A DNA stretch of 64,000 nt from assembly GCA_977020255.1 (NCBI GenBank), contig CDROCS010000496.1:496001-560000 (forward strand). Reading direction: 5' to 3'. Origin of the DNA: Obrimoposthia wandeli (Eukaryota). The notes under the pieces were generated by a model. The model searched no databases, had not been told where the DNA came from, and worked only from the letters and a program-made list of their open reading frames with translations. Of the stretch, positions 9,111 to 38,700 are shown piece by piece. Position numbers and translations under genes: made by a program. The number at the start of each line of letters is the position of its first letter. The first letter of the stretch is position 1.

Positions 9111-9111
9111 A

Positions 9112-22339: not shown

Positions 22340-22640
22340 AAGGTAAACGTTCCAGTCAGTGAAGATAATTGATTGTTAATAAGCTCTGTTTCGAAGAAGA
22401 TTCCCAGTGAAGATAATTGATTGTTAATAAGCTCTGTTTCGAAGAAGATTCCCAGTGAAGATAATTGATTGTTAATAAGCTCTGTTTCGAAGAAGATTCC
22501 CAGTGAAGATAATTGATTGTTAATAAGCTCTGTTTCGAAGAAGATTCCCAGTGAAGATAATTGATTGTTAATAAGCTCTACTTCGAAGAAGATTCCCAGT
22601 GAAGATAATTGATTGTTAATAAGCTCTGTTTCGAAGACGA
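22340..22640. repeat. 48-bp tandem array in LTR (~6 copies; also about 43740-44040)
   Basis: Unit cccagtgaagataattgattgttaataagctctgtttcgaagaagatt. Confidence 0.95.
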
Positions 22641-22730
22641 TTCCGCCAGGCTCGCAAGCACCACATACGGACCCTACACCGGACGTCCCACGAGTTGCTG
22701 TAACTGGTAAGAACACAGACTAGGTTCATT

Positions 22731-23161
22731 CATTGCCCCTAGTAGGCAATTAGGATATATTCATTACCCCTAGTTGGTAATTCTATATTTTCTTAATAAT
22801 ACACAAATTCATTGCCCCTAGCTGGTAATTAGGATCACTGCCTCTTTACCACAATCATTGCCCCTAGTTGGTAATTAGGATCGGACCTTTATTCATTGTC
22901 CCCAGCGACAATTAGGAAACCTACCAGACGTTTTTTCCCGTAAGATTCATTGTCCCTAGCTGGCAATTAGGTTCATTCATTGCCCCTAGTTGGTAATTCG
23001 GATAAATATTCATTGTCCCTAGTAGACAATTCGGTAAGATTCATTGTCCACTAGCTGACAATTCGGTTCGTTCATTGTCCGTAGTTGACAATTAGGAGTA
23101 AGTTTTCCTTGTCATCTTGACAATTAGGTTTTAGGAGATCCCTTGTCTACAGTAGACAATT
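22731..23161 (+). repeat. Array of 12 short hairpin motifs ATTGYC-N(5-9)-GRYAAT in LTR (also 44130-44561)
   Basis: Copies at about 22731, 22762, 22810, 22856, 22894, 22948, 22978, 23011, 23042, 23073, 23107, 23141 with variable spacers. Confidence 0.9.
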
Positions 23162-23430
23162 CGGGTCAAACACACAGAGAGAGTAAGGAACAAAGAAACA
23201 TTTAGCTAGAGATCAGAAGTAGGAGCGAAGAAATTTAAGAGAGTTGCGTTATAGATTAACCAACCTAAGTAAGAAGACTAAACCTAAGAAACTTAATCAC
23301 CTGAACGTAAAATCGATACGTGGTTCATCCCCACTTCTTGTAGAGACTTACAGAAGTCCTTTAGGAATTTTATCATACTTTTTAGAAATACGTACATAAA
23401 CGTATTGTGGTGTTAGTTACGTGAATTTTG

Positions 23431-23436
23431 AATAAA
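23431..23436 (+). terminator. Putative LTR polyadenylation signal
   Basis: AATAAA in context ttttgAATAAA, seen in similar context in related LTRs (about 46438, 58813, 60728). Confidence 0.5.
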
Positions 23437-23650
23437 CAATTTCCTACATTAGAACAAGTTGTTTTTACACCCTTCAGACTAAGAGACATCAAATCAAATA
23501 CCTTCAGATAGTACAAGAGATTAGGCAACCATAACACTAAGTAGGCCACGACCAACTTTAAGACCTGCTTCTAATCGAACTCACGTTGGGGTCCTCCGCA
23601 CATAAGAGGCTCTATACCAAGTTTCGTATAGAAACCCCAACATATTAAAG

Positions 23651-23669
23651 TGGTGCCCCGAGTGAGGAT
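23651..23669 (+). other. Primer-binding site, complementary to elongator tRNA-Met 3' end
   Basis: TGGTGCCCCGAGTGAGGAT, 8 nt after the LTR end; matches the complement of the metazoan elongator tRNA-Met 3' end as I recall it (TGGTGCCCCGTGTGAGGAT) with one difference. Confidence 0.75.
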
Positions 23670-23694: not shown

Positions 23695-23975
23695 GTAGAA
23701 TAAGTTCAGATAAGTTTTGGAAAATTGAGAATAAGTTTCAGGTGAATAGAATAAGTTCAGATAAGTTGCAGATAATTGAGAATAAGTTTCAGGTAAATAG
23801 AATAAGTACAGATATTAAGAATAAGTTTCAGATATTAAGAATAAGTTTCAGATATTAAGAATAAGTTTCAGATATTGAGAATAAGTTTCAGATAAATTGA
23901 GAATAAGTTTCAGATAAATTGAGAATAAGTTTCAGCAGAAGAAAATAGACAATTGAGAATAAGTTTCAGAAGAAG
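23695..23975. repeat. Leader tandem array 1 (20-22-bp units, core AGAATAAGTTTCAG)
   Basis: About 13 copies of the core directly downstream of the PBS. Confidence 0.9.
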
Positions 23976-23989
23976 ATATAAGTAAATTG

Positions 23990-24735
23990 AGTTAAGAATT
24001 TGATAAGTGTTGAGAAATCGAGTAGATTTGTTCCTCGAAGTTGAGAAATTGATAAGTGTTGAGAAATCGAGTAGATTTGCTCCTCGAAGTTGAGAATTTG
24101 ATAAGTGTTGAGAAATCGAGTAGATTTGTTCCTCGAAGTTAAGAATTTGATAAGTTTTTGAGAAATCGAGTAGATTTGTTCCTCGAAGTTAAGAATTTGA
24201 TAAGTGTTGAGAAATCGAGTAGATTTGTTCCTCGAAGTTAAGAATTTGATAAGTCTTGAGAAATCGAGTAGATTTGTTCCTCGAAGTTAAGAATTTGATA
24301 AGTGTTGAGAAATCGGGTAGATTTGTTCCTCGAAGTTAAGAATTTGATAAGTTTTGAGAAATCGGGTAGATTTGTTCCTCGAAGTTAAGAATTTGATAAG
24401 TTTTGAGAAATCGGGTAGATTTGTTCCTCGAAGTTAAGAATTTGATAAGTTTTGAGAAATCGGGTAGATTTGTTCCTCGAAGTAAGAATTTGATAAGTTT
24501 TGAGAAGTCGAGTGGATTTGTTCCTCGAGCCAGTAAATTTTATAAGCGAGAATCGAGTGGATTGATACTCGAAGTAATTAATTGAATAAGTTAAGTCGGG
24601 AGACTCTGTCCTCGAACTAATTAAAAAGATAAAAATCGTAAATAAATTGATAAAGTGAGAATCGAGTGGATTGATACTCGAAGTAATTAATTGAATAGGT
24701 TAAGTCGGGAGACTCTGTCCTCGAACTAATTAAAG
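23990..24735. repeat. Leader tandem array 2 (49-bp unit, ~11 copies) plus two related longer units
   Basis: Unit gttaagaatttgataagtgttgagaaatcgagtagatttgttcctcgaa (period 49, e.g. 24181 vs 24230); 24550-24735 has two copies of gaatcgagtggattgatactcgaag...gtcgggagactctgtcctcgaactaattaaa. Confidence 0.92.
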
Positions 24736-25142
24736 AGATAAAAAATCGTAAAATAAGAATTGTGAAATAAGATAAAAATAATAAGTATATTGATATCGTA
24801 AACGAATACATAATTGATAAGACAACGGATAATAGAAAAGGACCCGCGTATAATACTAGAAGACAAAGTCAGATTCCCAAGGAAGAGATAAATAATAATA
24901 AAGTTAACCGAATTGAACAGGTTCCCCAAACAGATAACAAAGTAACAGAAAAGACTAGAGTCGAAGAAAACGTATCAGAAAGAGACGTTGATCAATCAGC
25001 GGTTTCAACCGGCAGTTTTAATTTGACTGAATTATTTGGTGACATAGACCAAGAAGAATTTGAAATTGCCAATCCAGTAGTGATTGAGGAAGTTCCATTG
25101 AATAATATTGAAGAAATAGTTGAAGAAGTTATAGTTGAAAAT

Positions 25143-28100
25143 ATGGCTCAACCAGGAGCTCAAGCAGAAAATAATGCAGGAAATAATGTAGGTGACATGA
25201 ATGCCGAGCAGTTGGCACAAGCTTTAAATGCGACGTTGAGACCCAATTTTTCAGGATCATTGCAGATTACAAAGTTTAAAGGAGACGAGGAAAGTATTTG
25301 TGACTTCCTCGCAGAATATTCGAGTTGTGCAGATGTTCAAGGATGGAACGATAAAGAAAAATGTGTCAGAGTACAGGCACATTTAACCGGATTAGCACTT
25401 GAGGTGTATAAACATTTGACAGAAGCAGAACGTTTAGATTGGCCAACGTTGGAAAATGCTTTTATTGGAAAATTGGTATTAGGAGATTTAGCCAAAGTAA
25501 ATAAGCGACTCATGAGAGAACGGAAACAGAAACATGACGAAGGCGTGAATGAATACGCGTATGTTTTGAGAACCTTGGCCGCAAGAGCGTACCCAAGAAG
25601 AATAATGAGAAATCAGGACGGTAATCCTGTAGCTCCAGAAGCACAAGCAGCGGAAAATGACCGGAACCAAAATGAAATGGCAGAGGTCTTGTTAGATATA
25701 TTTAGAGGAGGATTGAAAAAGGATATTAAAGTGTTATTAGCAGTATCGGATACAAATGATTTTGATAACGCCGTGCGAAAGGCGAGAGAGATAGAGAAAA
25801 ATATAAAGAATAATGCAGCATTGGCAATCTACGCAATGACTGCAGGTGACGACGATAAGACAAAGGTCTTCGTGAATAAAACAGAACCGAGTAATTTTCA
25901 GAATCGAAATTATGGACAAAATAAGTTTGAAAAAATAGATGAATCCAGTAACGGAAATAGAGATAATTTCCGAAGTAGGAATCGAGATGATTCGAGAGGT
26001 AGAAATAATAGTGAGTCTTGGAACAGGAATCGAGATGATTCAAGAGGTAGAAATAATAATGATTCGTGGAATAGAAATAGAGATGATTCCAGGAATAGAT
26101 TTAATAGAGATAATTCAGGAAATCGCCAACCTTGGAGAGGAGACGATAGGAATTATAACGCCAACAGAGGAGAGCGAAGTGACTCTCGATTTGGAAATAA
26201 TGCAGGAAATAGTGACGGAAGATTCAATAATCGAGGAAGCGGTTTTGAATCGAATTTCCGAAGAAATGATTTTAGAGGACGCTATGATAATAGACAGAAT
26301 AGTCGTCGAGTACAGTTCGAAGATGAACAAAATAAGATAGATATTCGAGGGAGAATAATGTGTTATACGTGTAAGCAAATGGGTCACTATTCGAGAGATT
26401 GTACGAGAAGTAAAGAGTTCGGAACTAACAGATTTGGAAATAATAATTTCGGTAATAATAATTTTGGAAATAATTATAGAGGATATAATTCACCTCCGCC
26501 ATGGAATAGAGGTGGTGGATATACTCCACAGCCATGGAGACTGAATAATCAGTATACAGATAGACAACAGTCACCAGGTAGATACAATAACTATGCAGAC
26601 AGACAGCAAGGAGCTGAGAGATACAATAATTACGTAGGACAGCAAGGAGCTGAGAGATATAATAATTCCGGTAGATATAATAATAATAATGTTGACAAGA
26701 CAAATAGTCGAGAGAGTTCGCCGAAACCGAAAGGAAATTTTAGTTATGTAAGCGATGACAGTGATAGGAATCGCGAAACCGAGCTTCGACGCGAAATAGA
26801 TTTTGAAGATAGTGATAGTAAATTTGAACGAATGTTGGGAATAATTAAAGATTCACCACATACAAAGATGGCGAATTCATCTACGTTGTCGAAACAAGAG
26901 AAAAATCTACACTCGAGAGAAGAGATGAATGATTTAATGAATAGAATATTAGAAGCGTACGAGACACCAATAGAGAAAACGTGTAACGCACAACCTATGA
27001 CTGATCATGTAGAAGCAGCAAGAAATGCTACGAGTATGGAAAATGTAAAAAAGATAATTAGTGAAGCTAAGGAAACGTTGAATCAACCGTTAGATGAAAC
27101 GAGTGAAGCTCCAGAAGTTTTGGCCAAATTGCAAACAATTAAAGTGCACCGATTGGAAGAAGTGCGTGCAGAATTGGTTAAACATAGTCATGATAACTTG
27201 GGTTACAAAGAAGTACCCCGAGGACTATTGAAAGGTTATGGTCGTTATGTACAGAGATCAAACCAAACAGGAACGATGAAAATTTCACTTCGATTAATTT
27301 CCGGACAGATAATACATGAAAAACTTAACGTGTATCAAACAATGAAAACGATTCGGAAAAAGTTGGCTGAGAAACTTGAAATTGATGGAATGAATATGTT
27401 GTTCCATTATAAAGGGAGATCACTAGATGATGAGGACGTACCAGTCGAGTTTGGATATCCGATAGGAAATGAATTAGAGGAAAAAATTGATGTCATCACT
27501 GTAGGACGTCAAGAGTTAGTAGATAATGAAGGATTAACCGAGATATTGAATTCTGCGTTAGAAATGATAAAAACGCCTATAGAAATTTTAGACAGTTCAA
27601 GTGAAAGCGGAGATGGTGATGTGGCTGAAGCTTGGAACAAGACGTCTACGCCAGAACCGTACGTAACTGAATTGCAAGACATGAATTTGGAAAATGAGTT
27701 GACAACTCCAGTGGTCGAGGTACCACCAGAACCAGATATAATTCCAATCAGACAAGATGAAGTCACGGATACAGCTAACCAAGTGAGACAAAACGAAACC
27801 GTAACCCAACTAGTAGGAGAAGACGAAGTCTCCGAGATTGTAGATTTGGATTCACCAATTTGGCATGCCGCATACAAAGATAGACAAGCAGAGCAAATGA
27901 TGCGACAAAGTGAAGAGATTGGCCATGAAGAAGGACCAAGTCAAGAGATACAGTATAATGGTGAAACGTATGATCCAGGAGAGAATCAAACTGAGTATCA
28001 GTATTTTCGAAGAGGACCTGGAAGACCTAGAAAAGGCGAAAGTATATTACGAAATGTTCTAACTGCACCACAGACTGATGAAGAGAGACATCTAAGTATT

Positions 28101-31100
28101 GGACAGTTAGCAGCGTCATTAGAGCAGTATAGTGCAGAGAGGAATGAAGATATCAGAGGTGATATGAATTCGGAAACTCCAAGTAGTAAAGATATACTTA
28201 CGGGAATTCTCAGGCAAGTGAAGCCGAAGTTGTTTAAAATGTACAGAGATGAAACAACCGATATAACAGACAATTTGACTAAAGCAGTCAGATCACAGAT
28301 GTCTGCAGTAAAGAGAATGACCGCGAATCATGTATACCATGCATCGATAGATAGATTTTATGACGGTGAAGTTTTAGCGAGATTATGTGGAAACCAGACT
28401 ACAAATAAAAAGTTAATTACAGCAATCACATATCTATGTTTCCAATTGACGGAACGAACGAGCCAACCTCACGAAGTCAAACAAGGAATAAATGAAGCAA
28501 TGTATTTGATCGAGAATGTGTTACAGAGACGAATTGACGAAAATGGAGGTTGGGCAAAATTAAGTGACTACGCTAAAACCATTTTGGAAATGAATGAAGA
28601 CGATGACGAACAATGTCATGAGAATCGTCAAAAGGAAAATAAACAATACCGTCCGAAAGAGAGAAACAATCAACCAAATATGTCCACAACAATGATGATG
28701 ATGATGTTAGTAATGTTTATGGGAATGCAACAGGCATCAGGATTGATAGCATATGACTGTAGCATACCAAAGATGGGACAAAAGTATTCACTGCTTGACA
28801 GCGAAGACTGCCCAGAGTCACAACCGTCAAAACTAGAAGTTCAAGGTGTTGAAAACTACTTTGTGTATCAGGATGTTGATAAAGTACAAGTAGAAGTGAA
28901 AGAATGTTCAATCCATTCAAGTTATCACGAATTCTATTGTGGTCATAGAAGTTTTATGTCAGAAATCACACCTACCACACCGTACAAGGCACATAAGGTT
29001 TTGCCGAGAGATTGCGAAGATGCATTTCGAACGGGAACGATAGAGGTAGACAAGAATTACAAACCTGAAGTAAAAATTGGAGTGAGACGATACGAAACAG
29101 TCACGAGAGTCGGACAACGATGGGCCGATGGATCTTGTGACGGAGGAACAAAAAACGTGCGTGGAACCAAAGTAACCGAGTTAGTAATGGACGTAACTTA
29201 CAAAATCGAATTAAAAACATGGACCGCCAATTTTGATAAAAAGACACAACTAATGATGAAGTATCCAGAATGTAAAATGACAGATACATCTTGTTTTACA
29301 GGCGAATCCACAATTGTGTATAACATAAATCCGAAGCAATGCTCTTTAGTATTTTTGAAAGAGATTAGCTTTAATAAAATAAAAGGATTCCTGTATAATA
29401 AAGATGGAGAAGGATTCCTGTATAATAAAGTTGGAAAAGGATTGCTCAATGAAACAAGACCAATCCCAATGACAAAGACACCTACACTGTTAATGGCAAC
29501 ATCAATAGAAGAAGGATTGATATTTATTAAAAAGAGAAACAAAGCGCGATGCGGAATGACTGTTAGTACTACAAACTATCCAGGAATAGTTTTGTCTAAA
29601 GAAGCAATAGCATTGGCAGAAACCAAGCTAAAACCAAAAGATATGCAGCTACATACGTATTTTAATAATAAAATTGATTTCTATTATCATAAAGGATTGA
29701 TGCAAATGGAACAGTTATATCGAATGATGATTGAAAGAGATTGCCAGCTAAACAAAGAGATCGTGAGAACAAAGTTAGCATTAGCTATTACGAATCCAGA
29801 CATGGTAGCACCATTATTACCCTTGGATGAAGGAGTATTTGCTAAAACCATGGGAGAAGTATTGTATACTTACAAGTGTAATAAAGTAGAGGTACAGTTG
29901 AGAAAAACAAATCGATGTACGAGTGAATTGGCAGTAACGTATAATTTAAAAGATCTTTTTGTTGAACCAATCACGAGAATGTTACTTCCAAAAGACACTC
30001 CAACTAAAGAAATCAGCTGCTCTAATATAATGGCACCTGAATATCAGATGACGAATAATCTATGGATAACGTTACCTGATCGGAAGCCAACGAAAACCCC
30101 AGCGATGATAAGAATGACGAATCTTAAAGGTAAAATGAAATTCCAAGCGGTGGAAAATATGGAGAACGCAGGATTGTACAATGAAAAAGACTTAAAAGCG
30201 GCGTGGAACGAAATAATGTTTCCAGTAAGAAGAGCCAGAGTACTTACGGAGATGGTACATCGAGCATTACCGCCAGGAGCGAGATATGCGAATTTTGATA
30301 TGTTATTGTCGCCAAGTCATTTCAAGGAAGCAGCACATCAGACACTTAGAAAGATGTGGGGGAAATTCCTTGTTTTAGGACAATTATTTTCGGGTATCAT
30401 AGGTATTTATGTTATAATTAAATTTGTGCAGGTAATTATAGCCCAGGTGTTGTCTACGTATAGTTTATACAGGATAACCGGAATCACCTGGCAACTTATA
30501 ATTGGATGTTTTCCATTTTTAGCAAAATATCTAATGCACCATCATCACGAGAACGAGTTGCGAGCCCTCAAGAAGGAACAACACCAAACGAGAACCATGA
30601 TGAGAGAACCAAGAAACTGTCGAGACGATAACGACGACGATAATGATAGTCCAGGAGTATATGCAAAGATACCAGGAAAACCAAAGATTCCGTTACCAGA
30701 CAAGGAAGAAGTGGCGTTAAACCTATACCCAATGAAGGAATTGAAGGAAGAGAAGGAAAAATTCAAGAGAGGCATCTTAATGATAAGATGGCCTAAAGTG
30801 AGCTACAGTGAAATTCCACAAGCAGAGGAAAAAGACAAAAAAGATAATTCCAGAAGAATTCTGAAGTCTAGGATATCAAATGAGAATCCAAATGCTCCAC
30901 CACAAGTAGCAGTAACATTGAACGGAAGAGAATATCTTGCCGAAGTTGATACCGGATCTGCAGTATCAGTACTGAGTAAAGAAATCTTGTCATCAAAAGA
31001 ATTAAGAGAAGTATGTCCTAGAAAACAGACATTTGTTAACGTGAATGGTACAGATGTAGTGTCGGAAGGAACACTGAAATGTTCATTGAATATCGATGGA

Positions 31101-31334
31101 AGAGTATTACAGTTAAATGCTAGAATATTCACAGATTGCGGTAGTCCAGTCATGATTGGGATGGACGTAATACGAATGTTTGAAGGAATAATTATACTAC
31201 CAAACAACAAGAGTTATAAGAATGACAGTTCAGTGAGAGAGATAAAAATGTTGAGAGGACCTATAGTCGAAAAGGAAAAATGCACTACGTTCCGTATGGG
31301 AAGTTCGTACCCAGACAAAAACAGGAAGCGCTAG
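25143..31334 (+). CDS. Polyprotein segment 1: Gag - UBL - AT-hook - Bcl-2-like - Env glycoprotein - aspartic protease 1
   Basis: ORF 25023-31334, first ATG at 25143 (MAQPGA). Capsid-like FLAEYSSCADVQGW..EKC; CYTCKQMGHYSRDC knuckle (26361-26402); VDTGSAVSV...IGMDVI protease (30900-31200). Confidence 0.93.
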   Translation: MAQPGAQAENNAGNNVGDMNAEQLAQALNATLRPNFSGSLQITKFKGDEESICDFLAEYSSCADVQGWNDKEKCVRVQAHLTGLALEVYKHLTEAERLDWPTLENAFIGKLVLGDLAKVNKRLMRERKQKHDEGVNEYAYVLRTLAARAYPRRIMRNQDGNPVAPEAQAAENDRNQNEMAEVLLDIFRGGLKKDIKVLLAVSDTNDFDNAVRKAREIEKNIKNNAALAIYAMTAGDDDKTKVFVNKTEPSNFQNRNYGQNKFEKIDESSNGNRDNFRSRNRDDSRGRNNSESWNRNRDDSRGRNNNDSWNRNRDDSRNRFNRDNSGNRQPWRGDDRNYNANRGERSDSRFGNNAGNSDGRFNNRGSGFESNFRRNDFRGRYDNRQNSRRVQFEDEQNKIDIRGRIMCYTCKQMGHYSRDCTRSKEFGTNRFGNNNFGNNNFGNNYRGYNSPPPWNRGGGYTPQPWRLNNQYTDRQQSPGRYNNYADRQQGAERYNNYVGQQGAERYNNSGRYNNNNVDKTNSRESSPKPKGNFSYVSDDSDRNRETELRREIDFEDSDSKFERMLGIIKDSPHTKMANSSTLSKQEKNLHSREEMNDLMNRILEAYETPIEKTCNAQPMTDHVEAARNATSMENVKKIISEAKETLNQPLDETSEAPEVLAKLQTIKVHRLEEVRAELVKHSHDNLGYKEVPRGLLKGYGRYVQRSNQTGTMKISLRLISGQIIHEKLNVYQTMKTIRKKLAEKLEIDGMNMLFHYKGRSLDDEDVPVEFGYPIGNELEEKIDVITVGRQELVDNEGLTEILNSALEMIKTPIEILDSSSESGDGDVAEAWNKTSTPEPYVTELQDMNLENELTTPVVEVPPEPDIIPIRQDEVTDTANQVRQNETVTQLVGEDEVSEIVDLDSPIWHAAYKDRQAEQMMRQSEEIGHEEGPSQEIQYNGETYDPGENQTEYQYFRRGPGRPRKGESILRNVLTAPQTDEERHLSIGQLAASLEQYSAERNEDIRGDMNSETPSSKDILTGILRQVKPKLFKMYRDETTDITDNLTKAVRSQMSAVKRMTANHVYHASIDRFYDGEVLARLCGNQTTNKKLITAITYLCFQLTERTSQPHEVKQGINEAMYLIENVLQRRIDENGGWAKLSDYAKTILEMNEDDDEQCHENRQKENKQYRPKERNNQPNMSTTMMMMMLVMFMGMQQASGLIAYDCSIPKMGQKYSLLDSEDCPESQPSKLEVQGVENYFVYQDVDKVQVEVKECSIHSSYHEFYCGHRSFMSEITPTTPYKAHKVLPRDCEDAFRTGTIEVDKNYKPEVKIGVRRYETVTRVGQRWADGSCDGGTKNVRGTKVTELVMDVTYKIELKTWTANFDKKTQLMMKYPECKMTDTSCFTGESTIVYNINPKQCSLVFLKEISFNKIKGFLYNKDGEGFLYNKVGKGLLNETRPIPMTKTPTLLMATSIEEGLIFIKKRNKARCGMTVSTTNYPGIVLSKEAIALAETKLKPKDMQLHTYFNNKIDFYYHKGLMQMEQLYRMMIERDCQLNKEIVRTKLALAITNPDMVAPLLPLDEGVFAKTMGEVLYTYKCNKVEVQLRKTNRCTSELAVTYNLKDLFVEPITRMLLPKDTPTKEISCSNIMAPEYQMTNNLWITLPDRKPTKTPAMIRMTNLKGKMKFQAVENMENAGLYNEKDLKAAWNEIMFPVRRARVLTEMVHRALPPGARYANFDMLLSPSHFKEAAHQTLRKMWGKFLVLGQLFSGIIGIYVIIKFVQVIIAQVLSTYSLYRITGITWQLIIGCFPFLAKYLMHHHHENELRALKKEQHQTRTMMREPRNCRDDNDDDNDSPGVYAKIPGKPKIPLPDKEEVALNLYPMKELKEEKEKFKRGILMIRWPKVSYSEIPQAEEKDKKDNSRRILKSRISNENPNAPPQVAVTLNGREYLAEVDTGSAVSVLSKEILSSKELREVCPRKQTFVNVNGTDVVSEGTLKCSLNIDGRVLQLNARIFTDCGSPVMIGMDVIRMFEGIIILPNNKSYKNDSSVREIKMLRGPIVEKEKCTTFRMGSSYPDKNRKR
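27276..27506 (+). other. Ubiquitin/SUMO-like domain within segment 1
   Basis: MKISLRLISGQIIHEKLNVYQTMKTIRKKLAEKLEIDGMNMLFHYKGRSLDDEDVPVEFG...KIDVITV; beta-grasp pattern with SUMO-like F-x-Y-x-G...D-x-P...IDV; no terminal diGly. Confidence 0.7.
28188..28590 (+). other. Bcl-2-like helical domain within segment 1
   Basis: BH2-like RRIDENGGWAKL (NGGW at 28542-53); degenerate BH1-like GNQTTNKKLITAITYLCFQL at Bcl-2-like spacing. Confidence 0.55.
28680..30540 (+). other. Chuvirus-like (class III, gB-type) envelope glycoprotein within segment 1
   Basis: Signal-like MSTTMMMMMLVMFMGMQQASG then LIAYDC..YSLLDSEDC; ERDCQLNKEIVRTKLALAITNPD..GEVLYTYKC.KVEV..R.T.RC..EL.V, as in chuviral G proteins; C-terminal TM FLVLGQLFSGIIGIYVIIKFVQVII. 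Confidence 0.85.
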
Positions 31335-32090
31335 CAAAGTCGATACTTCACTACAAAAATGTAAATTTCGGACCACAAGATACGACGAGGAGAAAAATAA
31401 CATACGTAAATCTGTCAGAAAGGGATCCCATGAGATTCGAGAGAAAGAGACGAAATATATTAGAACAGTACTATTCAAAAGGAATGGCACGTAAAATGGC
31501 AAGATCAGGTTTAGAAATGTTAAACGCGACAAGCAGTTATGGTCAGGAGATAGTAGTACGATGCGTATGGTGTAGAGTAAAGTTTAGAGAATGGGAACAG
31601 AATGAAAACCCAATGAGACGTCATAAAGAGATGCACCAAATTGTCCATTTCTTTTGAAACTGAAAACGTCAAACGTACCAGAAATCCAAACGGGAAAAGC
31701 ACCCGATTTCGATTACAGTGACGGGATTCCAAAAGGAGAATCAGCTCTAATAACAGGAAGAGTAATAACGAATAGTCGAATTGAAGATATATTCGAAGTT
31801 ATGCGAGAAGTGAACGAATGTGACGAACAATATCGAGAAGTAACTTTCGAAGATCCAAGACTTAAAAAATTGGCAAAAAAGGAATTTTTGCTATAAAAAG
31901 GGATGGTAACGACGTAATTAAATGCCACAAGTGTAAAAAAGAACGAATTATCGACAGATACACTCTTGAGCTACCTAAGAAAATTTTACATCATGAATTT
32001 TGCGAATTTTGTACTTGTAAAAACAAAATAAAGCAAAAAGAACAGAAAACCGAATGTATAATCGAATACCAAATCACACGGAAAGAGATT
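31280..32090 (+). CDS. Polyprotein segment 2: two BIR domains (split across three frames)
   Basis: BIR1 KMARSGL...VVRCVWC..F.EWEQNENPMRRHKEMH[P]NCPFL, completed by one-base repair at about 31637. BIR2 RLKKLAK[K]GIFAIKRDGNDVIKCHKC...ILHHEFCEF, completed by one-base repair at about 31878; this frame runs into ORF 32091. Confidence 0.8.
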
Positions 32091-34496
32091 TTGGCTCAAC
32101 AAGACACACCGGTAGTGTCATTCGTGAGAAGGTTATATCCAAAAGAAGCAGAAAGAATCAGAGAATTGGTAGAATTAAAAATAAAAACTACGCGAAACGG
32201 ATATGGATCGATTTTTGAATTACTGCGAGATAAAGATGACAGTACAATTGAAACAAAAGAGAAAGAGTACATAAATGAACTAGAATACGTACTAGAAGAT
32301 CCGGAATGCGCAGTTTGCATGGTTAACAAAATAGAAGTTGCCTTTCTACCATGCGGACATGTAAGAACATGTCGGAGATGTGCGAATGAAATGGTATCAT
32401 GTCCGATTTGTCGAAGAATAATAGATCGACAAGTGAGAAACATTAGATTTCACTATCCAAACATAGGAAGTGGACGGACAGAGTGTAATAATTCGATAAA
32501 TACAATATACCATATGGGAAACATAAATGGAGCACAGCGACCAGCAGCTATCATTAGAGTAAATAATTTAAGAGTAAAAGCTTTAATTGATACAGGTGCT
32601 GTAGCTTCGATAGTAAGTGAAGACTGTTTGACAGAGGAACAGAAACGAACAATGGCAGAACCAGATGAATTCTTGGTATCGGTCAATGGAGACCCTGTAA
32701 AAGTGACGGGAATATTACCATGTACATTTATAATTGGACGTAATACGATCACTATACCAGTTAGAATCATGAAAGAATGTCCTGAACCTACAATTTTAGG
32801 AATGGATGTATTATCACAACTCAAAGGGATAAGTATTGATTTACAGGATCCAAGATTGAAGGATAGTACATCAAACAGACAAATAAACCAAATTGATGTA
32901 ATTATAGAGAATCCTATAAAAATCGGTAAAAGATCACAATTTCTCATTCAAGGTCACACATTATCAGAAGATAAAGGACCAGTTGTGTTCGAACCATCAC
33001 GAGATTTCATAGAGAAATACGAACTACCAGTTGTGAGTACGGTATGCCTGATCGAAAACCACAAAATACCAGTTAGACTGATGAATACAACCAACAATGA
33101 CATTCTATTATACAGAGGAATGAGGTTGGGAAAGATAGCACAGATGGAGAATTCCACTGTATGCGCTATGAAACTCGATAAAGATACGAATGATTACGAA
33201 GAAATAGTAATCCAATCAGAAAGACTAACAACTAGAGAAAAGAAACAATTACTTGATCTAATACATAAATTTCCGAAAGTAATTGCAAAAAATCCATATG
33301 ACATAGGAGAAACACCTGTCATAAAACATACAATACCACTGACAGAAGACAAAGTAGTCAGAAGAAGACCATATCGAGTACCATTACAATTACAAGATGA
33401 AGTAAAAAGTCAGATTGAAGATATGTCTAAAACAGGAGTAATTAGACCGAGTTTTTCGCCATTCTCAGCACCTGTAGTGTTGGTAAAAAAGAAGGATGGG
33501 AAAATGAGATTCTGTATAGATTTCAGAGAACTGAACAAGATCACAAGAAAAGATGTGTATCCATTACCTAGAATCGAAGAGATGCTCGATAAATTGGGTA
33601 ATTCAGATTATTTTACAACATTGGATTTGCAGAGTGGATACTGGCAAATCGAGATAGAGGAAGAGGATAAACACAAAACAGCCTTTTCTTGCGGAGATGG
33701 ATTATACGAATGCGAAAAGATGCCATTCGGACTGACAGGAGCTCCAGCAACATTTCAGCGTTGCATGAATTTTGTACTCGCATCGTGTGCAAATACGATG
33801 GTTTATATCGATGACATAATAATATTTTCGAAAACGTTCGAAGAACATTTAAAAAATCTTGAAGTTGTATTTAAAAGACTGGAAAACGCTAAATTAAAAG
33901 TTAAACCTACAAAATGCGTATGGGCTAAAGAGCGAGTAACATTTTTAGGACATATAGTATCGAAAGAAGGCATTCGACCTGATCCAGCAAAGATCGAGAA
34001 AGTAAAAGCGCATTTAGCGCCAAAGACTGTTAAAGAGATACAGAGTTTTTTAGGTCTTGCAAATTATTATAGACGATTTGTTGAACATTTTTCAGATATA
34101 GCAACACCATTGAGAAAGTTGACGAGAAAAGATGAGAAGTTCATATGGGGAGAAGAAGCCCAACAAGCGTTCGAGCATTTAAAAGAAAGACTGATAAAAG
34201 CACCAATATTAGCGTTTCCAGATATAAACCGACAATTCATACTAATGACAGATGCAAGTAACTATGCTGTAGGAGCAGTATTGGGACAAGAGGATGACGA
34301 AGGAAGAGAACACGTCATTGCGTATGCGAGTAGAGGATTAAACAGAGCCGAAAGAGGATACTCTGTTATCGAAAAGGAATGTCTAGCCATAGTGTATTCA
34401 TGTAGACAGTACAGACACTATTTGCTAGGACAAAAGTATTCCTGTATACAGATCACAAACCACTACAGTTCTTGTATAAACATAGAGATGAGATGA
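32091..34496 (+). CDS. Polyprotein segment 3: IAP-type RING - aspartic protease 2 - RT - RNase H (N-part)
   Basis: CAVCMVNKIEVAFLPCGHVRTCRRCANEMVSCPICR (32307-32411); LIDTGAVAS..ILGMDVL; RFCIDFRELN..YPLPRI, MPFGL..AP.TFQ, YIDD (33804-15); MTDASNYAVGAVL, YSVIEKECLA. Confidence 0.97.
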   Translation: MAQQDTPVVSFVRRLYPKEAERIRELVELKIKTTRNGYGSIFELLRDKDDSTIETKEKEYINELEYVLEDPECAVCMVNKIEVAFLPCGHVRTCRRCANEMVSCPICRRIIDRQVRNIRFHYPNIGSGRTECNNSINTIYHMGNINGAQRPAAIIRVNNLRVKALIDTGAVASIVSEDCLTEEQKRTMAEPDEFLVSVNGDPVKVTGILPCTFIIGRNTITIPVRIMKECPEPTILGMDVLSQLKGISIDLQDPRLKDSTSNRQINQIDVIIENPIKIGKRSQFLIQGHTLSEDKGPVVFEPSRDFIEKYELPVVSTVCLIENHKIPVRLMNTTNNDILLYRGMRLGKIAQMENSTVCAMKLDKDTNDYEEIVIQSERLTTREKKQLLDLIHKFPKVIAKNPYDIGETPVIKHTIPLTEDKVVRRRPYRVPLQLQDEVKSQIEDMSKTGVIRPSFSPFSAPVVLVKKKDGKMRFCIDFRELNKITRKDVYPLPRIEEMLDKLGNSDYFTTLDLQSGYWQIEIEEEDKHKTAFSCGDGLYECEKMPFGLTGAPATFQRCMNFVLASCANTMVYIDDIIIFSKTFEEHLKNLEVVFKRLENAKLKVKPTKCVWAKERVTFLGHIVSKEGIRPDPAKIEKVKAHLAPKTVKEIQSFLGLANYYRRFVEHFSDIATPLRKLTRKDEKFIWGEEAQQAFEHLKERLIKAPILAFPDINRQFILMTDASNYAVGAVLGQEDDEGREHVIAYASRGLNRAERGYSVIEKECLAIVYSCRQYRHYLLGQKYSCIQITNHYSSCINIEMR

Positions 34497-35737
34497 GTAG
34501 ATTAAACAGATGGTTTCTAAAATTGGCCGAATTCGATCTAGAAATCCGTTATAGAACCGGAAAGTCGAACGGCAACGCAGATTGTTTGTCGAGATTGACA
34601 AATGTAGACGAGAAAGGAAACATAATTCCAGAAGAAGATGAAACCAATGACCAAAAAGGAGAAGCAAATCTACTGACGATTTTGCTAAAGACGGGTAAAA
34701 TAGACAAAGAGATCATCAAAGAACAGAAAGAAGATGAAGAACTGAGTCTAATCAAAGAATTGTTGGTGAAAGGAGATCTAAACGATGAAATGACGAAAAA
34801 TACTCAATAAAAAGAAGGAATCTTGTATATTGTCAATAATGTCGGAAAGATAGTAGTAGTAATTCCGAAGTCATTGAAAACAGCAGTGATGATCCAGTAT
34901 CACGACGGAACACTAGGAGGACATCTGTCAGGGCGAAAGACAATAGCCAGAATCAAAGAGAAGTACCATTGGGATGGTATGGAAGACGACATAAAACAAT
35001 GGTGTAAACAATGTAAAGTATGTTTAACCAGAAAAGACACCGGAACTCGTACTAAAGTTCCACTGAAACCAATGCCAGTTCCCTTGGCACCAATGGAATT
35101 CACAGCGATGGATATATTGGGACCATTGAGAGAATCAAGTAAAGGAAACAAGTATGTCATAGTATTTACGGATTACATGACGAGATGGGTAGAAGCATAT
35201 CCCATGCAGAACCAGAAAGCTGAAACAATAGCGCAAATCTTAGTGGAAGAGATAATATTTCGATACGGAGTGCCTAGAAAGTTGTTAACGGATCAAGGTA
35301 AGAACTTCACTGGAGAAGTCATAAAAGCAGTATCGAAGATATTCGGAATCATGAAGTTACAAACTTCACCATATCACCCACAGACAGATGGTCTGGTGGA
35401 AAGGTTTAATAAAACTTTATGTATGATGGTACAATCCTATTGCTCAGACAAGCAAGAGGATTGGGATAAATATTTACCTTCATGTTTATATGCTTACAGG
35501 AATTCAGTTCGAGAGGCGACGGGTCACACACCATTCTATCTGATGTATCTCAGACAGAACAATATGCCAATGGATCTGGAGTGGACCGAGCCAACATCTC
35601 AGTACCTAGAAACTGAACAATACATTGTCGTCATGAAGGAAAGATTACAAGATGCTTGGACCAAAGCCGGATTGAAGTTGAAATTCAATCAAGAAGGTTA
35701 CAAGGAACAATACGACAAAAAAGCAAAAACCACATGA
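34472..35737 (+). CDS. Polyprotein segment 4: RNase H C-part and integrase Zn/core (in-frame TAA at 34808)
   Basis: TDHKPL in shifted frame, NGNADCLSR, YHDGTLGGHL...CKQCKVC, AMDILGPL, LLTDQGKNF, QTDGLVERFNKTL. Confidence 0.95.
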
Positions 35738-35756
35738 ATTTAGAGTCGGAGATCAA

Positions 35757-38700
35757 GTGATGATATTTTATCCAGTCATCGAACCAGGTCTATCGTTTAA
35801 ACTTCATAGACCATACAAAGGACCCTACAAGGTGATCCAGACAACCTCAACAAATTTGAAAGTAATCAACGAAGAGAATCGGAACAAAGAACCGATGATT
35901 GTACATGCAAATCGATGCAAATTAGTACCAAATAAAGATAATGCGTCACGATATGAGTTAAGATCACAGAAATCGAAATCGAATACCAATACCATTAAAC
36001 TTACACGAATGGTAAGTGATCGGAACTACATAAACATGATGACGAGTGGTAGCGAAGAAAAACCAGCGAGAATTGGTATGCTCAGAATGAAGTACCAAGA
36101 GGAAAAGGAAGTAATCCGACACATCGCACCACAAGAGATATTAGAAGAAGACGAAGAGATAATAGTCGTTTTCGAAAAAACACAACCAACAGATGTAGCT
36201 AAAGAAGTCATTGTGAAAGATGCACTAACAAACGAATTTCTGTGCGAACTTAGAGTATCATACTACGACGGAAATACATTAGTCGCAGCACTTTATCAAA
36301 ATTCCAATGTGTTTACGACTGAGAAAGTGATAATCGAAATCACATTGACACCAAACATAGTTGCATGGCAGAACTATGACAGTACTGAAGCAGGACTAGC
36401 CAGTCAGGAAGAAAAAGAACCGGCCGGTGGTCACATACTGCATGGTACACCAAAAAGACTCAAACAAGAATACCACGATGTAATAATGGTATTACGTAAT
36501 TCACATGGGAAAAGAGATATCATGAGAGTCCATTTAATCGACGCTGACACTGAAAAGATAATTTGTCAGATGGACACCAAATACTTTGATGGAAAGACAA
36601 TTGTATGTTGTATACCAGAATCTCACCGATTAGAGACAGATCAAACGGAAGTATCTGTAAGGTTGAGCGTAATAGAAGGATTCCATTCGCCAACCTATCC
36701 GGAAGTGACTAACAATAAAATCATCAAAGCAACGGCAGAATTACGCATTGACAGCGGATACCGGAAGTGGGAAGCTAAAAATAAAAAACCACAAAGAATC
36801 AATATGATCCGAGAACAAGTAACAACTTCAAACCAGCCAAAATATCATGCTGAAATAGTATCATCCGCGCCAAGTGTGATCACATCGATAAACGACGAAA
36901 TTATAATTTTACTAAAAAATCGATGGCCGTCATCAACCGAGATACGAGTAAATTTAATTAATCATGCGAAGACACCGATATCTAAGCTGAATGTTACCTA
37001 TTTCGATGGATTGTCCATCATGGGTAAATTGGAAACAATTGTCATGTGCTATGGAGCACAGTTCCAAGTTGAGATACTTAAAGATAGTGTAATACCGTAT
37101 CCGATTCACAAATACGAAGGGGAAATCAATCCAATTATTCTAACACCTTCATTAATTTCAGTCCAGACAGACATACCAGAATACCCTTCGAGCGAGTCTA
37201 GTGAAGACAGCGAACCAGAAAGTAACGATACAGAATCAACAGAATCCGAAGATAACATAATAGAGCGATTCGGAAGAACCATGGAGATTGAATTCGCTAA
37301 AGAGAGCAGAAAAAGACAAAACATAGAATTCGTGAAACAGAATATACAAGAAAGACGAATTAAATCTGCAGAAGAGACCGAGTCGGAAGAAGACTCAACA
37401 AAGGAACAGACATCAGAGACAAAGATGAATATCTCTCCAGCAATACGAATGCTGAGAGGAAAGAAACTGGCGAAACTATCCAACATCGACGAACAGATAG
37501 AGAAGAGATTAGAAAGACTAAAACTTGAAGAGTCAGAATTAATGCCACCAATGAGTGAGATCATTCCAGGTAAGTTATACCTCGGAAATGTGGAGGATGC
37601 AACAGATGAAAAGAAACTGTTGGAACAAGGAATAACATATGTGATCAACGTTACAATGAATCACAAATCGCAATATCAGACGATCAGAGCTATGACATTA
37701 AGAGTAAAAGACTCAATGGACGCTAATCTTCTCGAATGGTTCGTAGAAACAAACGAAATACTTCACAGAGAACTCCGGAACAAAGGAAAAGTGTTGGTAC
37801 ATTGTCAGAAAGGAATTTCTCGATCAGCAACCCTAGTATTAGCATATCTAATAAAGACTAGACGAATGCAGGTACTAGAAGCGTTAAAATACCTACAGGA
37901 GAGAAGAAGTATTGCAAACCCAAATCTTAATTTTTTGGGACAGTTGGCAAATTACCAACTTCTGTTGCAAGAACAAAGACGGATGGACGACATTCCTGAG
38001 GATCCAAAGGAAAAGAATTTCCTCCAAGCATTATCATTGACCGGGTTATTTTTAGCCGGAGTCGATAAAATTACACAGATAATGCCAAAAGTATTTTTAT
38101 GTCATCCAGGAGATATAGATACTGCTGGATTAAAGTTCCATAGTATCAACCGAGTAATCAACATTGTTGAAGTCGGAAATGAGATAATTAGTCTGTGTCA
38201 AAATACTGAAGATGACACCACTCGATACATACATGCTTCCAATCGAGAGATAAACGATGCACAACAACATTTGACGAAATTGACTCAAACCATCCAAGCT
38301 GAAGTCACAGAAGGAAACGGCGTTCTGATATATCAGAAAAAAGGTACAATGTTAGCGCCTACCATAGGTGTATCCTTGTTGGTAGAGTACCATGGTCACA
38401 CGCCAGAAGAAGCAATGGTCTACATCAAACAGAATAGACCGAATACGGAATTCAAACCGTTACTCGTTCGAGAAATAGAGAAATACACCGAAAAGAGGAA
38501 ACAACAACGAGAAACAAATGAAGCTACAACAACAGCGCCCAGCTTTCAATACCAAAGATTGCTAGCGATAGGCTTGTTAAGTTGTTTAATGCCGATAACG
38601 GGAGCACAGGAGATAGGCTCCAACCACGGAAATAGTTCCTGGTTCAACGAAATCCAAAATTACACCATACAGTACCATACGCCAGCACTGATGATGCTAT

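What the first reader, a model, noticed from the sequence alone, without database searches (positions are those of the whole stretch)
28680..30540. Chuvirus/gB-type envelope glycoprotein placed inside the Gag ORF, upstream of protease and Pol
Seen: internal signal-like Met-rich segment, LIAYDC start, chuviral-type Cys spacing and a C-terminal TM, in frame between Gag-linked domains and a retropepsin with no stop. Known: env in retroviruses and errantiviruses is a separate 3' ORF; chuvirus glycoprotein capture is known in BEL/Pao elements. Inference: a gag-env-pro-pol order in a Gypsy backbone implies co-translational membrane insertion and signal-peptidase processing, as in RNA-virus polyproteins, possibly tethering Gag and Pol to the budding membrane.
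Basis: partly seen in the sequence, partly recalled or inferred. Interest (0 to 1): 0.9.

Follow-up and report, generated by a model that had tools for sequence, protein, structure and literature searches.

The report
Envelope gene inside retroelement polyprotein
A young 23-kb gypsy-type endogenous retrovirus carries a chuvirus/herpes-gB-type fusion glycoprotein in frame between its Gag and protease, which is real and conserved but already described for giant planarian "Burro" elements and nematode retroviruses.

Summary
Window 28680-30540 lies inside one 2103-codon ORF (25023-31334). This ORF encodes Gag with a CCHC knuckle, a long linker, an internal signal-like segment, a 541-residue ectodomain with 14 conserved cysteines, a transmembrane segment and a retropepsin.

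- **Glycoprotein identity.** It matches Pfam Monjiviricetes_fusion at E 1e-94. The AlphaFold model (pLDDT 86.8) matches herpesvirus gB (E 2e-13) and chu-like virus glycoproteins (E 8e-46).
- **Element.** It is a Ty3/gypsy LTR element, 21754-45041, with LTRs 99.9% identical.
- **Conservation.** At least 15 relatives at about 35-42% Env identity keep Env in one ORF with Gag and/or PR-RT-RNase H-IN. Two of them encode Gag through IN without a stop.
- **Prior description.** In-frame env between gag and pol was reported for planarian Burro elements in 2019. GAG-ENV-POL order was reported in nematodes, bryozoans and flatworms in 2022 and 2026.
- **Mechanism.** Co-translational insertion through an internal signal peptide is plausible. 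No conserved Met precedes the signal and there is no 2A motif. This is not shown, and a spliced env mRNA is not excluded.
- **Extras in this copy.** Tandem proteases, an IAP-like BIR+RING module and MKP-like phosphatase domains.

I file it as a new member of a known kind, of moderate interest.

The parts
21754..23641 (+). 5' LTR (1888 bp)
   Evidence: BLASTN pair 21754-23641 / 43153-45041: 99.9% identity, 1 mismatch and 1 gap. It starts with TG. The flanks give a 5-bp target-site duplication matching at 4 of 5 bases. It contains a 48-bp x 6 tandem array.
23651..23668 (+). Primer-binding-site-like sequence starting TGG, 9 nt after the LTR
   Evidence: Read directly from the sequence. The matching tRNA was not identified, and there is no tRNA gene in the window.
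23761..24752 (+). Leader with three tandem-repeat arrays (20 bp x 8.6, 49 bp x 11, 109 bp x 1.9)
   Evidence: Tandem Repeats Finder and the repeat finder.
25143..31334 (+). gag-env-pr1 ORF, first ATG to stop (the frame is open from 25023)
   Evidence: 2103 codons without a stop. It is colinear in a single frame with the continuous ORF of relative L004. The start resembles that of relative P0005.
25377..25592 (+). Gag capsid-like region (weak Retrotrans_gag match)
   Evidence: PF03732, E 0.008, 16.8 bits, below the cut-off of 24.1. The Gag N-terminal part aligns by BLASTP to five relatives.
26361..26405 (+). CCHC zinc knuckle (nucleocapsid)
   Evidence: PF00098, 25.7 bits against a cut-off of 20.8. 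CX2CX4HX4C pattern.
27288..27437 (+). Ubiquitin-like segment (weak)
   Evidence: PF00240, E 0.005, 17 bits, below the cut-off.
28365..28553 (+). Possible Bcl-2-like region just upstream of the signal segment (inconclusive)
   Evidence: PF00452, E 0.09. Best PDB hit is a viral Bcl-2 homologue, 1k3k, E 0.096. A profile of three relatives did not strengthen this. The single-sequence AF2 model has pLDDT 41.
28680..28742 (+). Internal signal-peptide-like segment, with small residues at -3/-1 before the LIAYDC motif
   Evidence: Sequence. An equivalent hydrophobic segment plus a small-residue site lies before the Y/F-D-C motif in 13 relatives, with no conserved Met in front of it.
28743..30359 (+). 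Env ectodomain, chuvirus-type class III (gB-like) fusion glycoprotein
   Evidence: PF24664, E 1e-94 to 3e-96. AF2 pLDDT 86.8. Foldseek against PDB: top 50 hits are all herpesvirus gB, E 2e-13. Foldseek against BFVD: chu-like virus glycoproteins, E 8e-46, TM up to 0.64. 14 conserved Cys.
30360..30467 (+). Transmembrane region (36 hydrophobic residues)
   Evidence: Kyte-Doolittle maximum 2.32. Modelled as one continuous helix. A segment of equivalent length is present in relatives.
30468..30905 (+). Env tail and linker to the protease, including a weaker hydrophobic segment and a His tract
   Evidence: Sequence and hydropathy. It aligns to P0005 through to PR1.
30906..31175 (+). Retropepsin PR1, in frame with Env
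   Evidence: PF13975/PF13650, E about 1e-6. D-T-G-S motif.
31481..31639 (+). BIR domain of an IAP-like module between PR1 and PR2
   Evidence: PF00653, 30.8 bits against a cut-off of 22.9.
32298..32429 (+). IAP-type RING finger of the same module
   Evidence: PF13920 zf-C3HC4_3, 46.7 bits against a cut-off of 27.
32436..36047 (+). pol (PR2-RT-RNase H-IN), given as one part; interrupted in this copy by 2 frame changes and 1 in-frame stop
   Evidence: The counts come from TBLASTN with the continuous ORF of L004. Domains: PR2 32535-32828, RT 33483-33959 (YIDD), RNase H 34146-34439, IN 34862-35422. Best named relatives are Ty3/gypsy Pol proteins at about 40% identity.
37575..37958 (+). Dual-specificity phosphatase domain 1 in the Pol C-terminal extension (the extension ends at 39809)
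   Evidence: PF00782, 120 bits. PDB DUSP10/MKP-5, E 1.7e-23.
38130..38477 (+). Second, weaker phosphatase-like domain
   Evidence: PF00782, 24.8 bits on its own, below the cut-off of 33.5. It was counted as a second stretch.
39942..41222 (+). 3' accessory ORF (426 aa), no recognisable family
   Evidence: No Pfam hit. No similarity to the 3' ORF of L004.
42346..42882 (+). 3' accessory ORF with a RING finger
   Evidence: PF13639, 32.6 bits against a cut-off of 27.3.
43153..45041 (+). 3' LTR (1889 bp)

Best explanation
**Shown.** The region is the env domain of a recently inserted 23.3-kb Ty3/gypsy-type endogenous retrovirus of the Burro-like / GAG-ENV-POL kind.
- Its Env is a chuvirus-type class III (gB-fold) fusion glycoprotein.
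- Env is encoded in the same reading frame as Gag upstream and a retropepsin downstream.
- This in-frame order is a conserved family trait.

**Inferred mechanism.**
- The genomic RNA is translated from the Gag AUG into a Gag-linker-Env-PR1 polyprotein. In relatives this continues through Pol.
- The internal hydrophobic segment acts as a signal sequence. It directs the nascent chain to the ER, where signal peptidase cuts just before the LIAYDC motif.
- That leaves Gag and its linker domains on the cytosolic face, anchored by the signal segment. The ectodomain is in the lumen, and the transmembrane segment returns the chain to the cytosol.
- The protease (and Pol) therefore stays cytosolic but membrane-tethered until the retropepsin cuts the Env tail and the Gag linker.
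- This is how flavivirus- and alphavirus-type structural polyproteins work, and it would bring capsid, enzymes and fusogen together at one membrane.
For: - **Continuous ORF.** 2103 codons, about 1e-73 by chance.
- **Family match.** PF24664 at E 1e-94.
- **Fold.** The model has pLDDT 86.8 with a 48-residue central helix. It matches gB at E 2e-13 over about 640 columns. It matches chu-like virus glycoproteins at E 8e-46.
- **Cysteines.** All 14 ectodomain Cys are in conserved columns.
- **Gag and Env in one ORF.** Seen in the window, P0005, P0011, P0013, P0019, P0020 and L004, and via CCHC knuckles in P0008, P0009 and P0016.
- **Env and PR (and beyond) in one ORF.** Seen in P0001-P0005, P0008, P0009, P0012, P0016, P0017, P0020, L003 and L004.
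- **Complete polyproteins.** L004 (3700 aa) and P0020 (2146 aa) encode Gag-Env-PR-RT-RH-IN without a stop.
- **Signal segment.** Every relative has the hydrophobic segment and a small-residue site before the Y/F-D-C motif, but no conserved Met ahead of it. P0005 has none within 45 residues.
- **No ribosome skipping.** There is no 2A-like NPGP motif.
- **One strong transmembrane segment**, followed by a basic tail.
- **Literature.** The same in-frame order is reported in Burro elements, and GAG-ENV-POL order in three phyla.
Against: - There is no transcript or protein evidence.
- An env mRNA spliced from the leader or the first gag codons to a site upstream of the signal would also need no local AUG, so one search does not exclude splicing.
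- The hydrophobic region is 36 residues long with a Lys in the middle, and a weaker hydrophobic segment follows. An even number of membrane spans, which would put the protease in the lumen, cannot be ruled out with the hydropathy tools at hand.
- The signal segment has a modest Kyte-Doolittle mean of 0.97 because it is Met-rich.
- At least one relative (L005) has Env bounded by ORF changes on both sides.
- This copy's pol is interrupted, so this copy may not make the full set of proteins.
Confidence: 0.6

Rival explanations
1. Env is made mainly from a spliced subgenomic mRNA, as in orthoretroviruses. A donor in the leader or early gag joins an acceptor just upstream of the signal segment. The unspliced RNA serves as genome and as message for Gag. 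The shared frame then matters only downstream, giving an Env-PR(-Pol) fusion that the protease trims from the Env tail.
For: - In this copy a Met sits exactly at the start of the signal segment, at 28680.
- Retroviral env genes are normally expressed from spliced mRNAs, some of which borrow the gag AUG (established knowledge).
- The linker between the knuckle and the signal is long and poorly conserved. This fits a region that need not be translated together with Env.
Against: - The Met at the signal start is not conserved. In relatives, Mets occur only inside the hydrophobic core or not at all.
- The Gag-to-Env frame stays open over 500-840 codons of weakly conserved linker in several relatives whose Env domains are only about 35-42% identical to the window's. 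That is hard to explain unless the linker is translated through.
- No splice signals were tested, and no transcript data are available.
Confidence: 0.3
2. The Env domain is a decaying relic of an old capture. It is carried passively in the polyprotein and no longer acts as a membrane protein.
For: - There is only one N-X-S/T sequon in the ectodomain.
- This copy's pol is interrupted.
- A short internal duplication forms a low-confidence loop in the model.
Against: - All 14 Cys, the signal segment and the transmembrane segment are retained.
- The model is high-confidence.
- The domain is kept across at least 15 sequence clusters, with Env HMM scores of 350-830 bits.
- The LTRs are 99.9% identical.
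Confidence: 0.06
3. The arrangement is an artefact: either an assembly chimera, or a chuvirus-derived endogenous viral element inserted by chance into a gypsy gag-pol ORF.
For: Chuvirus-like glycoprotein EVEs are common in arthropod genomes. One relative's contig looks chimeric at one end.
Against: - The same order and frame recur in independent contigs from at least three sources: ENA, JGI and an NCBI MAG.
- The whole Gag-Env stretch is colinear with L004 in a single frame.
- The published descriptions agree.
Confidence: 0.02

Closest known systems
Burro / GYPSM1 giant gypsy-like LTR retrotransposons of planarians (Grohme et al. 2018; Arkhipova & Yushenova 2019, PMC6431247)
   Same: - Giant LTR element with tandem repeats.
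- Gag with CCHC at the N-terminus of a huge polyprotein.
- env in frame between gag and PR, with hits to mononegavirus fusion glycoproteins.
- Accessory apoptosis and ubiquitin-type motifs: BIR, RING, ubiquitin-like, and Bcl-2-like just before env.

In the window, BIR and RING are clear. The ubiquitin-like and Bcl-2-like matches are weak. The host DNA is AT-rich, about 30% GC.
   Different: - 23.3 kb rather than more than 30 kb.
- ORF1 is 2103 aa rather than 4873-5140 aa.
- No MATH, ankyrin or dUTPase was found here.
- Here there are two proteases with the IAP-like module between them, and MKP-like phosphatase domains after IN.
- No Burro sequence was available for direct comparison, and the host is unidentified.
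GAG-ENV-POL 'errantiviruses' with HSV/gB-type Env in Nematoda, Bryozoa and Platyhelminthes (Chary & Hayashi 2026, PMC13524379), and the nematode ERVs of Sacco et al. 2022 (J Gen Virol 103:001739)
   Same: A Ty3/gypsy pol backbone, a gB-type class III Env placed between gag and pol, and an ectodomain flanked by a signal or TM segment and a TM segment.
   Different: - Those elements were catalogued as three ORFs within LTR spans of 5-14 kb.
- The text I could search does not discuss a continuous reading frame (no occurrences of 'in-frame', 'fused' or 'same ORF').
- From memory only, the Sacco abstract speaks of a continuous gag-env-pro-pol ORF. The paper could not be read here.
Anakin and related mosquito BEL/Pao elements, and arthropod gypsy elements with chuvirus-like glycoproteins (Dezordi et al. 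2020, PMC7642597)
   Same: A chuvirus-type glycoprotein captured by an LTR retroelement.
   Different: There env is a separate ORF next to pol, not embedded in the Gag-Pro-Pol frame. Anakin has a BEL/Pao backbone.
Glycoproteins of Jingchuvirales (chuviruses) and herpesvirus gB (class III fusogens)
   Same: Pfam family, cysteine pattern, signal and C-terminal hydrophobic segments, and predicted fold.
   Different: - Only 17-20% identity to chu-like virus proteins and 9-13% to gB.
- The viral proteins are stand-alone gene products.
- TM-scores to gB are only 0.36-0.44, as expected for an elongated multidomain protein in a different conformation.
Structural polyproteins of flaviviruses and alphaviruses (internal signal sequences cut by signal peptidase), and gammaretroviral R-peptide trimming of the Env tail by the viral protease: functional analogues, cited from established knowledge
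   Same: A cytosolic capsid protein followed by an internal signal and a lumenal glycoprotein in one translation product, and a viral protease acting on a cytoplasmic Env tail.
   Different: No homology is implied, and no processing has been demonstrated for this element.

Membership tests
Monjiviricetes/chuvirus-type class III fusion glycoprotein (PF24664) | Sequence match to the family profile above the curated threshold | tested here: met
   318-323 bits against a cut-off of 27. 2156 homologues at E<=1e-3.
Monjiviricetes/chuvirus-type class III fusion glycoprotein (PF24664) | Class III (gB/G-like) fold with a central helix and beta-rich domains | tested here: met
   AF2 pLDDT 86.8. Foldseek: gB at E 2e-13, probability 1.0. 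Chu-like virus glycoproteins at E 8e-46, TM up to 0.64.
Monjiviricetes/chuvirus-type class III fusion glycoprotein (PF24664) | Conserved cysteine framework, N-terminal signal and C-terminal membrane anchor | tested here: met
   14 of 14 Cys are in conserved columns. Hydrophobic segments by hydropathy. No dedicated signal or TM predictor was available.
Monjiviricetes/chuvirus-type class III fusion glycoprotein (PF24664) | Trimer formation and membrane-fusion activity | not testable with these tools
Ty3/gypsy (Metaviridae) LTR retroelement | LTRs, target-site duplication, PBS, Gag with CCHC, and PR-RT-RNase H-IN in that order | tested here: met
   The closest named Pol proteins are Ty3/gypsy types (K02A2.6-like, 'transposon 17.6/412') at about 40% identity. 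The TSD matches at 4 of 5 bases, and the PBS partner tRNA was not identified.
Burro-type giant planarian gypsy elements | env domain in frame between gag and PR within one polyprotein | tested here: met
   compared with the description.
Burro-type giant planarian gypsy elements | Giant size with accessory apoptosis and ubiquitin motifs (BIR, RING, Ubi/SUMO-like, Bcl-2-like before env, ankyrin, MATH, dUTPase) | tested here: inconclusive
   The element is 23.3 kb. BIR and RING are met. The ubiquitin-like and Bcl-2-like matches are only sub-threshold. MATH, ankyrin and dUTPase are not found in the window. Ankyrin is found in relatives L002 and L005.
Burro-type giant planarian gypsy elements | Sequence relatedness to Burro-1..4/GYPSM1, and a planarian host | not testable with these tools
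   No Burro sequence or host label could be obtained. Host searches failed.
Nematode ERVs (Sacco et al. 2022) / GAG-ENV-POL errantiviruses (Chary & Hayashi 2026) | gypsy pol with gB-type env placed between gag and pol | tested here: met
   compared.
Nematode ERVs (Sacco et al. 2022) / GAG-ENV-POL errantiviruses (Chary & Hayashi 2026) | Placement in their Pol or Env phylogeny and cysteine-bridge classes | not tested
   Their sequences and supplements are not held.

The most novel reading that the evidence does not exclude
The element uses an RNA-virus-style membrane-threaded polyprotein. After signal-peptidase cleavage, the signal segment would leave the Gag-linker product tail-anchored on the cytosolic face, with its ubiquitin-like and possibly Bcl-2-like domains. 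PR-Pol would hang from the Env tail. Tandem proteases would allow intramolecular activation. Together with the IAP-like and MAP-kinase-phosphatase-like modules, this would make it a retroelement carrying a host-manipulation toolkit of the kind otherwise seen in large DNA viruses.
Probability: 0.25. Interest if true: 0.7.

Novelty: new member of a known kind. Interest (0 to 1): 0.4.

Why it matters
It adds a young, largely open-frame example, and at least 15 database relatives, to a little-studied class of invertebrate endogenous retroviruses. In this class a fusion glycoprotein taken from negative-strand RNA viruses sits inside the Gag-Pro-Pol reading frame.

How such a protein is made remains an open question. 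The candidates are an internal signal peptide, splicing, or cleavage by the protease. A well-defined copy with exact domain bounds makes that question testable with transcript and proteome data. The accessory modules (IAP-like, MKP-like, possibly Bcl-2-like) bear on how giant retroelements pick up host regulators.

It does not overturn current knowledge, because the architecture itself has been in print since 2019.

Tried and rejected
- **PDB by sequence.** A sequence search of PDB with Env gave only chance hits. The fold comparison was needed instead.
- **Ribosome skipping.** No NPGP motif occurs in the window's three large ORFs or in 14 relatives.
- **Host identification.**
  - Exact-protein look-ups found nothing on record.
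  - There were no Rfam hits and no tRNA genes.
  - Pol homologues reach only about 40% identity, spread over many phyla.
  - Cluster look-ups gave no names for the fused group. One member was mis-binned as a Flavobacteriaceae MAG.
  - Flanking ORFs gave no Pfam hits apart from an unrelated RT fragment.
- **Bcl-2-like region.** Two independent weak best hits were not strengthened by a three-sequence profile. The single-sequence model was too poor to search with, so this stays inconclusive.
- **3' accessory ORF.** No similarity to the 3' ORF of L004.
- **Papers.** The Sacco 2022 paper and the eLife supplements could not be read. Searches for 'gag-env-pro-pol' and 'NERV' found nothing.
- **Word-indexed protein search.** With Env alone it found only 2 hits. 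The exhaustive HMM search was needed.
  - They were never sent to a tool and are not used as evidence.
  - My first notebook entry lists mechanical ORF bounds inside pol, which bracket its interruptions. I have not deleted it.
Full report
**1. Observation.**

The interval 28680-30540 lies inside one ORF, 25023-31334 on the + strand, with 2103 codons and no stop. Given the local base composition, a stop is expected every 13 codons or so. The chance of such an ORF is about 1e-73. The longest open stretches outside the element are 136 and 263 codons.

Base 28680 is the Met that opens a Met-rich hydrophobic segment (ORF residue 1220). The LIAYDC motif follows at residues 1241-1246. The ectodomain has 541 residues (1241-1781), 14 cysteines and one N-X-S/T sequon. 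A 36-residue hydrophobic segment lies at residues 1780-1815, and a retropepsin D-T-G-S motif at residue 1976.

Upstream in the same frame are a CCHC knuckle (26361-26405) and a weak Retrotrans_gag match.

**2. What the protein is.**

- Pfam assigns the region to PF24664 (Monjiviricetes_fusion, viral fusion glycoprotein) at 318-323 bits against a cut-off of 27.
- A plain sequence search of PDB finds nothing.
- An exhaustive profile search of 1.84 billion representatives finds 2156 homologues at E<=1e-3. The roughly 650-residue stand-alone ones include insect genome copies that UniRef calls 'Glycoprotein'.
- I aligned 105 of these homologues (about 20% identity). All 14 ectodomain cysteines fall in columns that are invariant or at least 90% conserved.
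- AlphaFold2 on that alignment gives mean pLDDT 86.8, with beta-rich domains and a 48-residue central helix.
- Foldseek against PDB returns only herpesvirus gB among the top 50 hits (VZV, HSV-1/2, HCMV, EBV, PRV). E is 2e-13, probability 1.0, over about 640 columns. TM-scores are 0.36-0.44, as expected for an elongated protein in a different conformation.
- Against predicted viral structures the best matches are glycoproteins of chu-like viruses. E runs from 8e-46 to 1e-38, with 17-20% identity and TM-scores up to 0.64.

The 'no class III fold' refutation test therefore fails, and the chuvirus-type label is supported.

**3. The element.**

- Direct repeats 21754-23641 and 43153-45041 are 99.9% identical, with one mismatch and one gap.
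- They begin with TG. They are flanked by a 5-bp duplication matching at 4 of 5 bases. A TGG-initiated PBS-like sequence follows.
- The element is 23,288 bp.
- Between the LTRs, all on the + strand, the order is as follows:
  - a leader with three tandem-repeat arrays;
  - the gag-env-pr1 ORF;
  - an IAP-like module, with BIR at 30.8 bits and an IAP-type RING at 46.7 bits;
  - a second retropepsin (PR2), then RT (YIDD), RNase H and integrase;
  - a long Pol C-terminal extension with a strong and a weak dual-specificity phosphatase domain;
  - two further ORFs, one of them with a RING.
- The strong phosphatase domain is closest to MAP-kinase phosphatases (DUSP10, E 1.7e-23).
- Pol is Ty3/gypsy. 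The best named relatives are K02A2.6-like and 'transposon 17.6/412' Pol proteins, and trematode proteins, at about 40% identity.

Compared with the continuous ORF of relative L004:

- The gag-env part of the window is colinear in a single frame with no stop.
- The PR2-to-IN part shows two frame changes and one in-frame stop (counts only).
- In the PR1-PR2 interval, PR1, the BIR domain and the RING/PR2 do not share one open frame. That means at least two frame changes and one stop.
- This copy is therefore not fully open despite near-identical LTRs. It may descend from an already defective master, or the assembly may carry small indel errors. I could not tell which.

**4. Is the in-frame placement an accident of this copy? 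No.**

- A search restricted to proteins of similar length returned five proteins at about 40% Env identity that also contain protease and, in two cases, RT, RNase H and IN.
- P0005 (2099 aa) starts like the window's Gag. It has a CCHC knuckle, the signal segment, Env, TM and two proteases in one ORF.
- A metagenome scan gave L004, whose single 3700-aa ORF runs CCHC-Env-PR-RT-RNase H-IN. It also gave L003 (3419 aa: Env-PR-PR-RT-RNase H-IN).
- Of the 15 representatives of at least 1000 aa from the exhaustive search, 14 have Env in one ORF with Gag and/or PR/RT/IN. P0020 (2146 aa) is a compact complete Gag-Env-PR-RT-RNase H-IN.
- The sources are one ENA assembly, one JGI metagenome and an NCBI MAG record.
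- One relative (L005) has Env bounded by ORF changes on both sides. Its Env ORF starts about 130 residues before the signal, with no proper start of its own, so it looks like a decayed or mis-assembled copy.

**5. How Env might be made.**

- In all 13 relatives where the Y/F-D-C motif can be located, a hydrophobic stretch and a small-residue -3/-1 site come before it. No Met is conserved ahead of the stretch.
- Mets occur only inside the hydrophobic core, and P0005 has none within 45 residues.
- No 2A-like motif exists.
- The frame between knuckle and signal stays open over 500-840 codons, although that linker is barely alignable between families.

These facts favour translation through the linker and use of the hydrophobic segment as an internal signal sequence, with signal-peptidase cleavage just before the conserved N-terminus shared with stand-alone viral glycoproteins.

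The topology then works. Gag and linker are cytosolic, the ectodomain is lumenal, and one TM returns the chain to the cytosol. PR (and Pol in relatives) is cytosolic but tethered until the retropepsin cuts. This part is inference.

It is weakened in two ways:

- The TM region is 36 residues long with a central Lys, and a weaker hydrophobic segment follows. The number of spans is therefore not settled.
- A spliced mRNA borrowing an upstream AUG would also need no local start codon.

I put the polyprotein route at about 0.6 and the spliced-mRNA route at about 0.3.

**6. Comparison with what is known.**

- **Arkhipova & Yushenova 2019** (PMC6431247) describe Burro/GYPSM1 of the planarians Schmidtea mediterranea and Dugesia tigrina.
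  - These are giant gypsy-like LTR elements with tandem repeats and a 4873-5140-aa ORF1.
  - The ORF1 starts with a typical Gag and CCHC knuckles, and carries MATH, Ubi2/SUMO-like, BCL2-like, BIR, RING and ankyrin motifs.
  - It has an env region between BCL2 and PR, with hits to fusion glycoproteins of arthropod and fish mononegaviruses.
- **Li et al. 2021** (PMC8532177) call BURRO1 highly abundant and active, with intestine-enriched RNA.
- **Chary & Hayashi 2026** (PMC13524379) find gB-type Env in GAG-ENV-POL order in Nematoda, Bryozoa and Platyhelminthes. They cite Sacco et al. 2022 for nematode elements with env and pol flipped. They also note chuvirus-like glycoproteins next to gypsy pol in arthropods.

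The window's element shares with Burro:

- the in-frame env;
- BIR and RING;
- weak ubiquitin-like and Bcl-2-like matches, the latter in the position just before env;
- leader tandem repeats;
- AT-rich surrounding DNA, about 30% GC.

It differs from Burro in several ways:

- It is smaller.
- It lacks MATH, ankyrin and dUTPase.
- It has two proteases flanking the IAP-like module.
- It carries MKP-like phosphatase domains.

I could not obtain a Burro sequence or identify the host, so membership in Burro proper is untested. I treat the element as Burro-like.

**7. Verdict.**

- The architecture is not new.
- I file it as a new member of a known kind, interest 0.4.
The transcript test remains open.

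**8. Slips.**

- My first notebook entry records mechanical ORF bounds within pol, which bracket its interruptions. It stands undeleted.

Noticed in passing
window 30906-31175 and 32535-32828; P0001, P0003: There are two retropepsin domains per element: one fused to the Env tail and one before RT. Tandem proteases recur in P0002, P0004, P0005, P0008 and L003. P0001 and P0003 also have a PR1-like domain after the integrase. Two copies in one chain could form an intramolecular dimer.
   Followed up: partly
window 31481-31639 and 32298-32429: An IAP-like module (BIR plus IAP-type RING) sits between the two proteases. Pfam scans did not see it in the relatives examined. In this copy the two domains are not in one open frame.
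   Followed up: partly
window 37575-37958 and 38130-38477: The Pol C-terminal extension carries a strong and a weak dual-specificity phosphatase domain. They are closest to MAP-kinase phosphatases such as DUSP10. This domain is not mentioned in the Burro description.
   Followed up: partly
window 28365-28553 and 27288-27437: There are sub-threshold Bcl-2-like and ubiquitin-like matches in the Gag-Env linker. The Bcl-2-like one lies about 40 residues before the signal segment. After signal-peptidase cleavage that segment would resemble a tail anchor. A G-G-W-type motif is shared with L003, and partly with L004.
   Followed up: partly
window 25900-26900 (ORF1 residues ~300-620): Gag has long Asn/Arg/Gly/Asp-rich low-complexity repeats on both sides of the zinc knuckle.
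   Followed up: no
window 21754-45041: The LTRs are 99.9% identical, yet pol has two frame changes and one stop relative to an intact relative. This could mean a defective master copy, trans-mobilisation, or assembly indels. It is unresolved.
   Followed up: partly
window 28743-30359: There is only one N-X-S/T sequon in a 541-residue ectodomain, and it lies in the low-confidence loop made by a short internal duplication.
   Followed up: no
window 22357-22644 / 43756-44043 and 23761-24752: There is a 48-bp x 6 tandem array inside each LTR, and three tandem arrays in the leader.
   Followed up: no
window 9060-9572: A fragment of an unrelated reverse transcriptase, 30% identical to the element's RT.
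   Followed up: no
window 52001-54000 and 59749-60340: A GC-richer island (44% GC) holds two ORFs of 249 and 222 aa with no Pfam hits. Further along is a 56-bp x 11 tandem array.
   Followed up: no
L001 1-5000: The metagenome contig carrying relative P0003 starts with 63%-GC DNA encoding bacterial-type ABC/MacB/TetR fragments next to 39%-GC element DNA. It is probably a chimeric contig.
   Followed up: no
P0009: A 2627-aa Env-PR-RT-RNase H-IN protein of this family is deposited as a hypothetical protein of a Flavobacteriaceae MAG. This looks like a binning contaminant from an animal genome.
   Followed up: no
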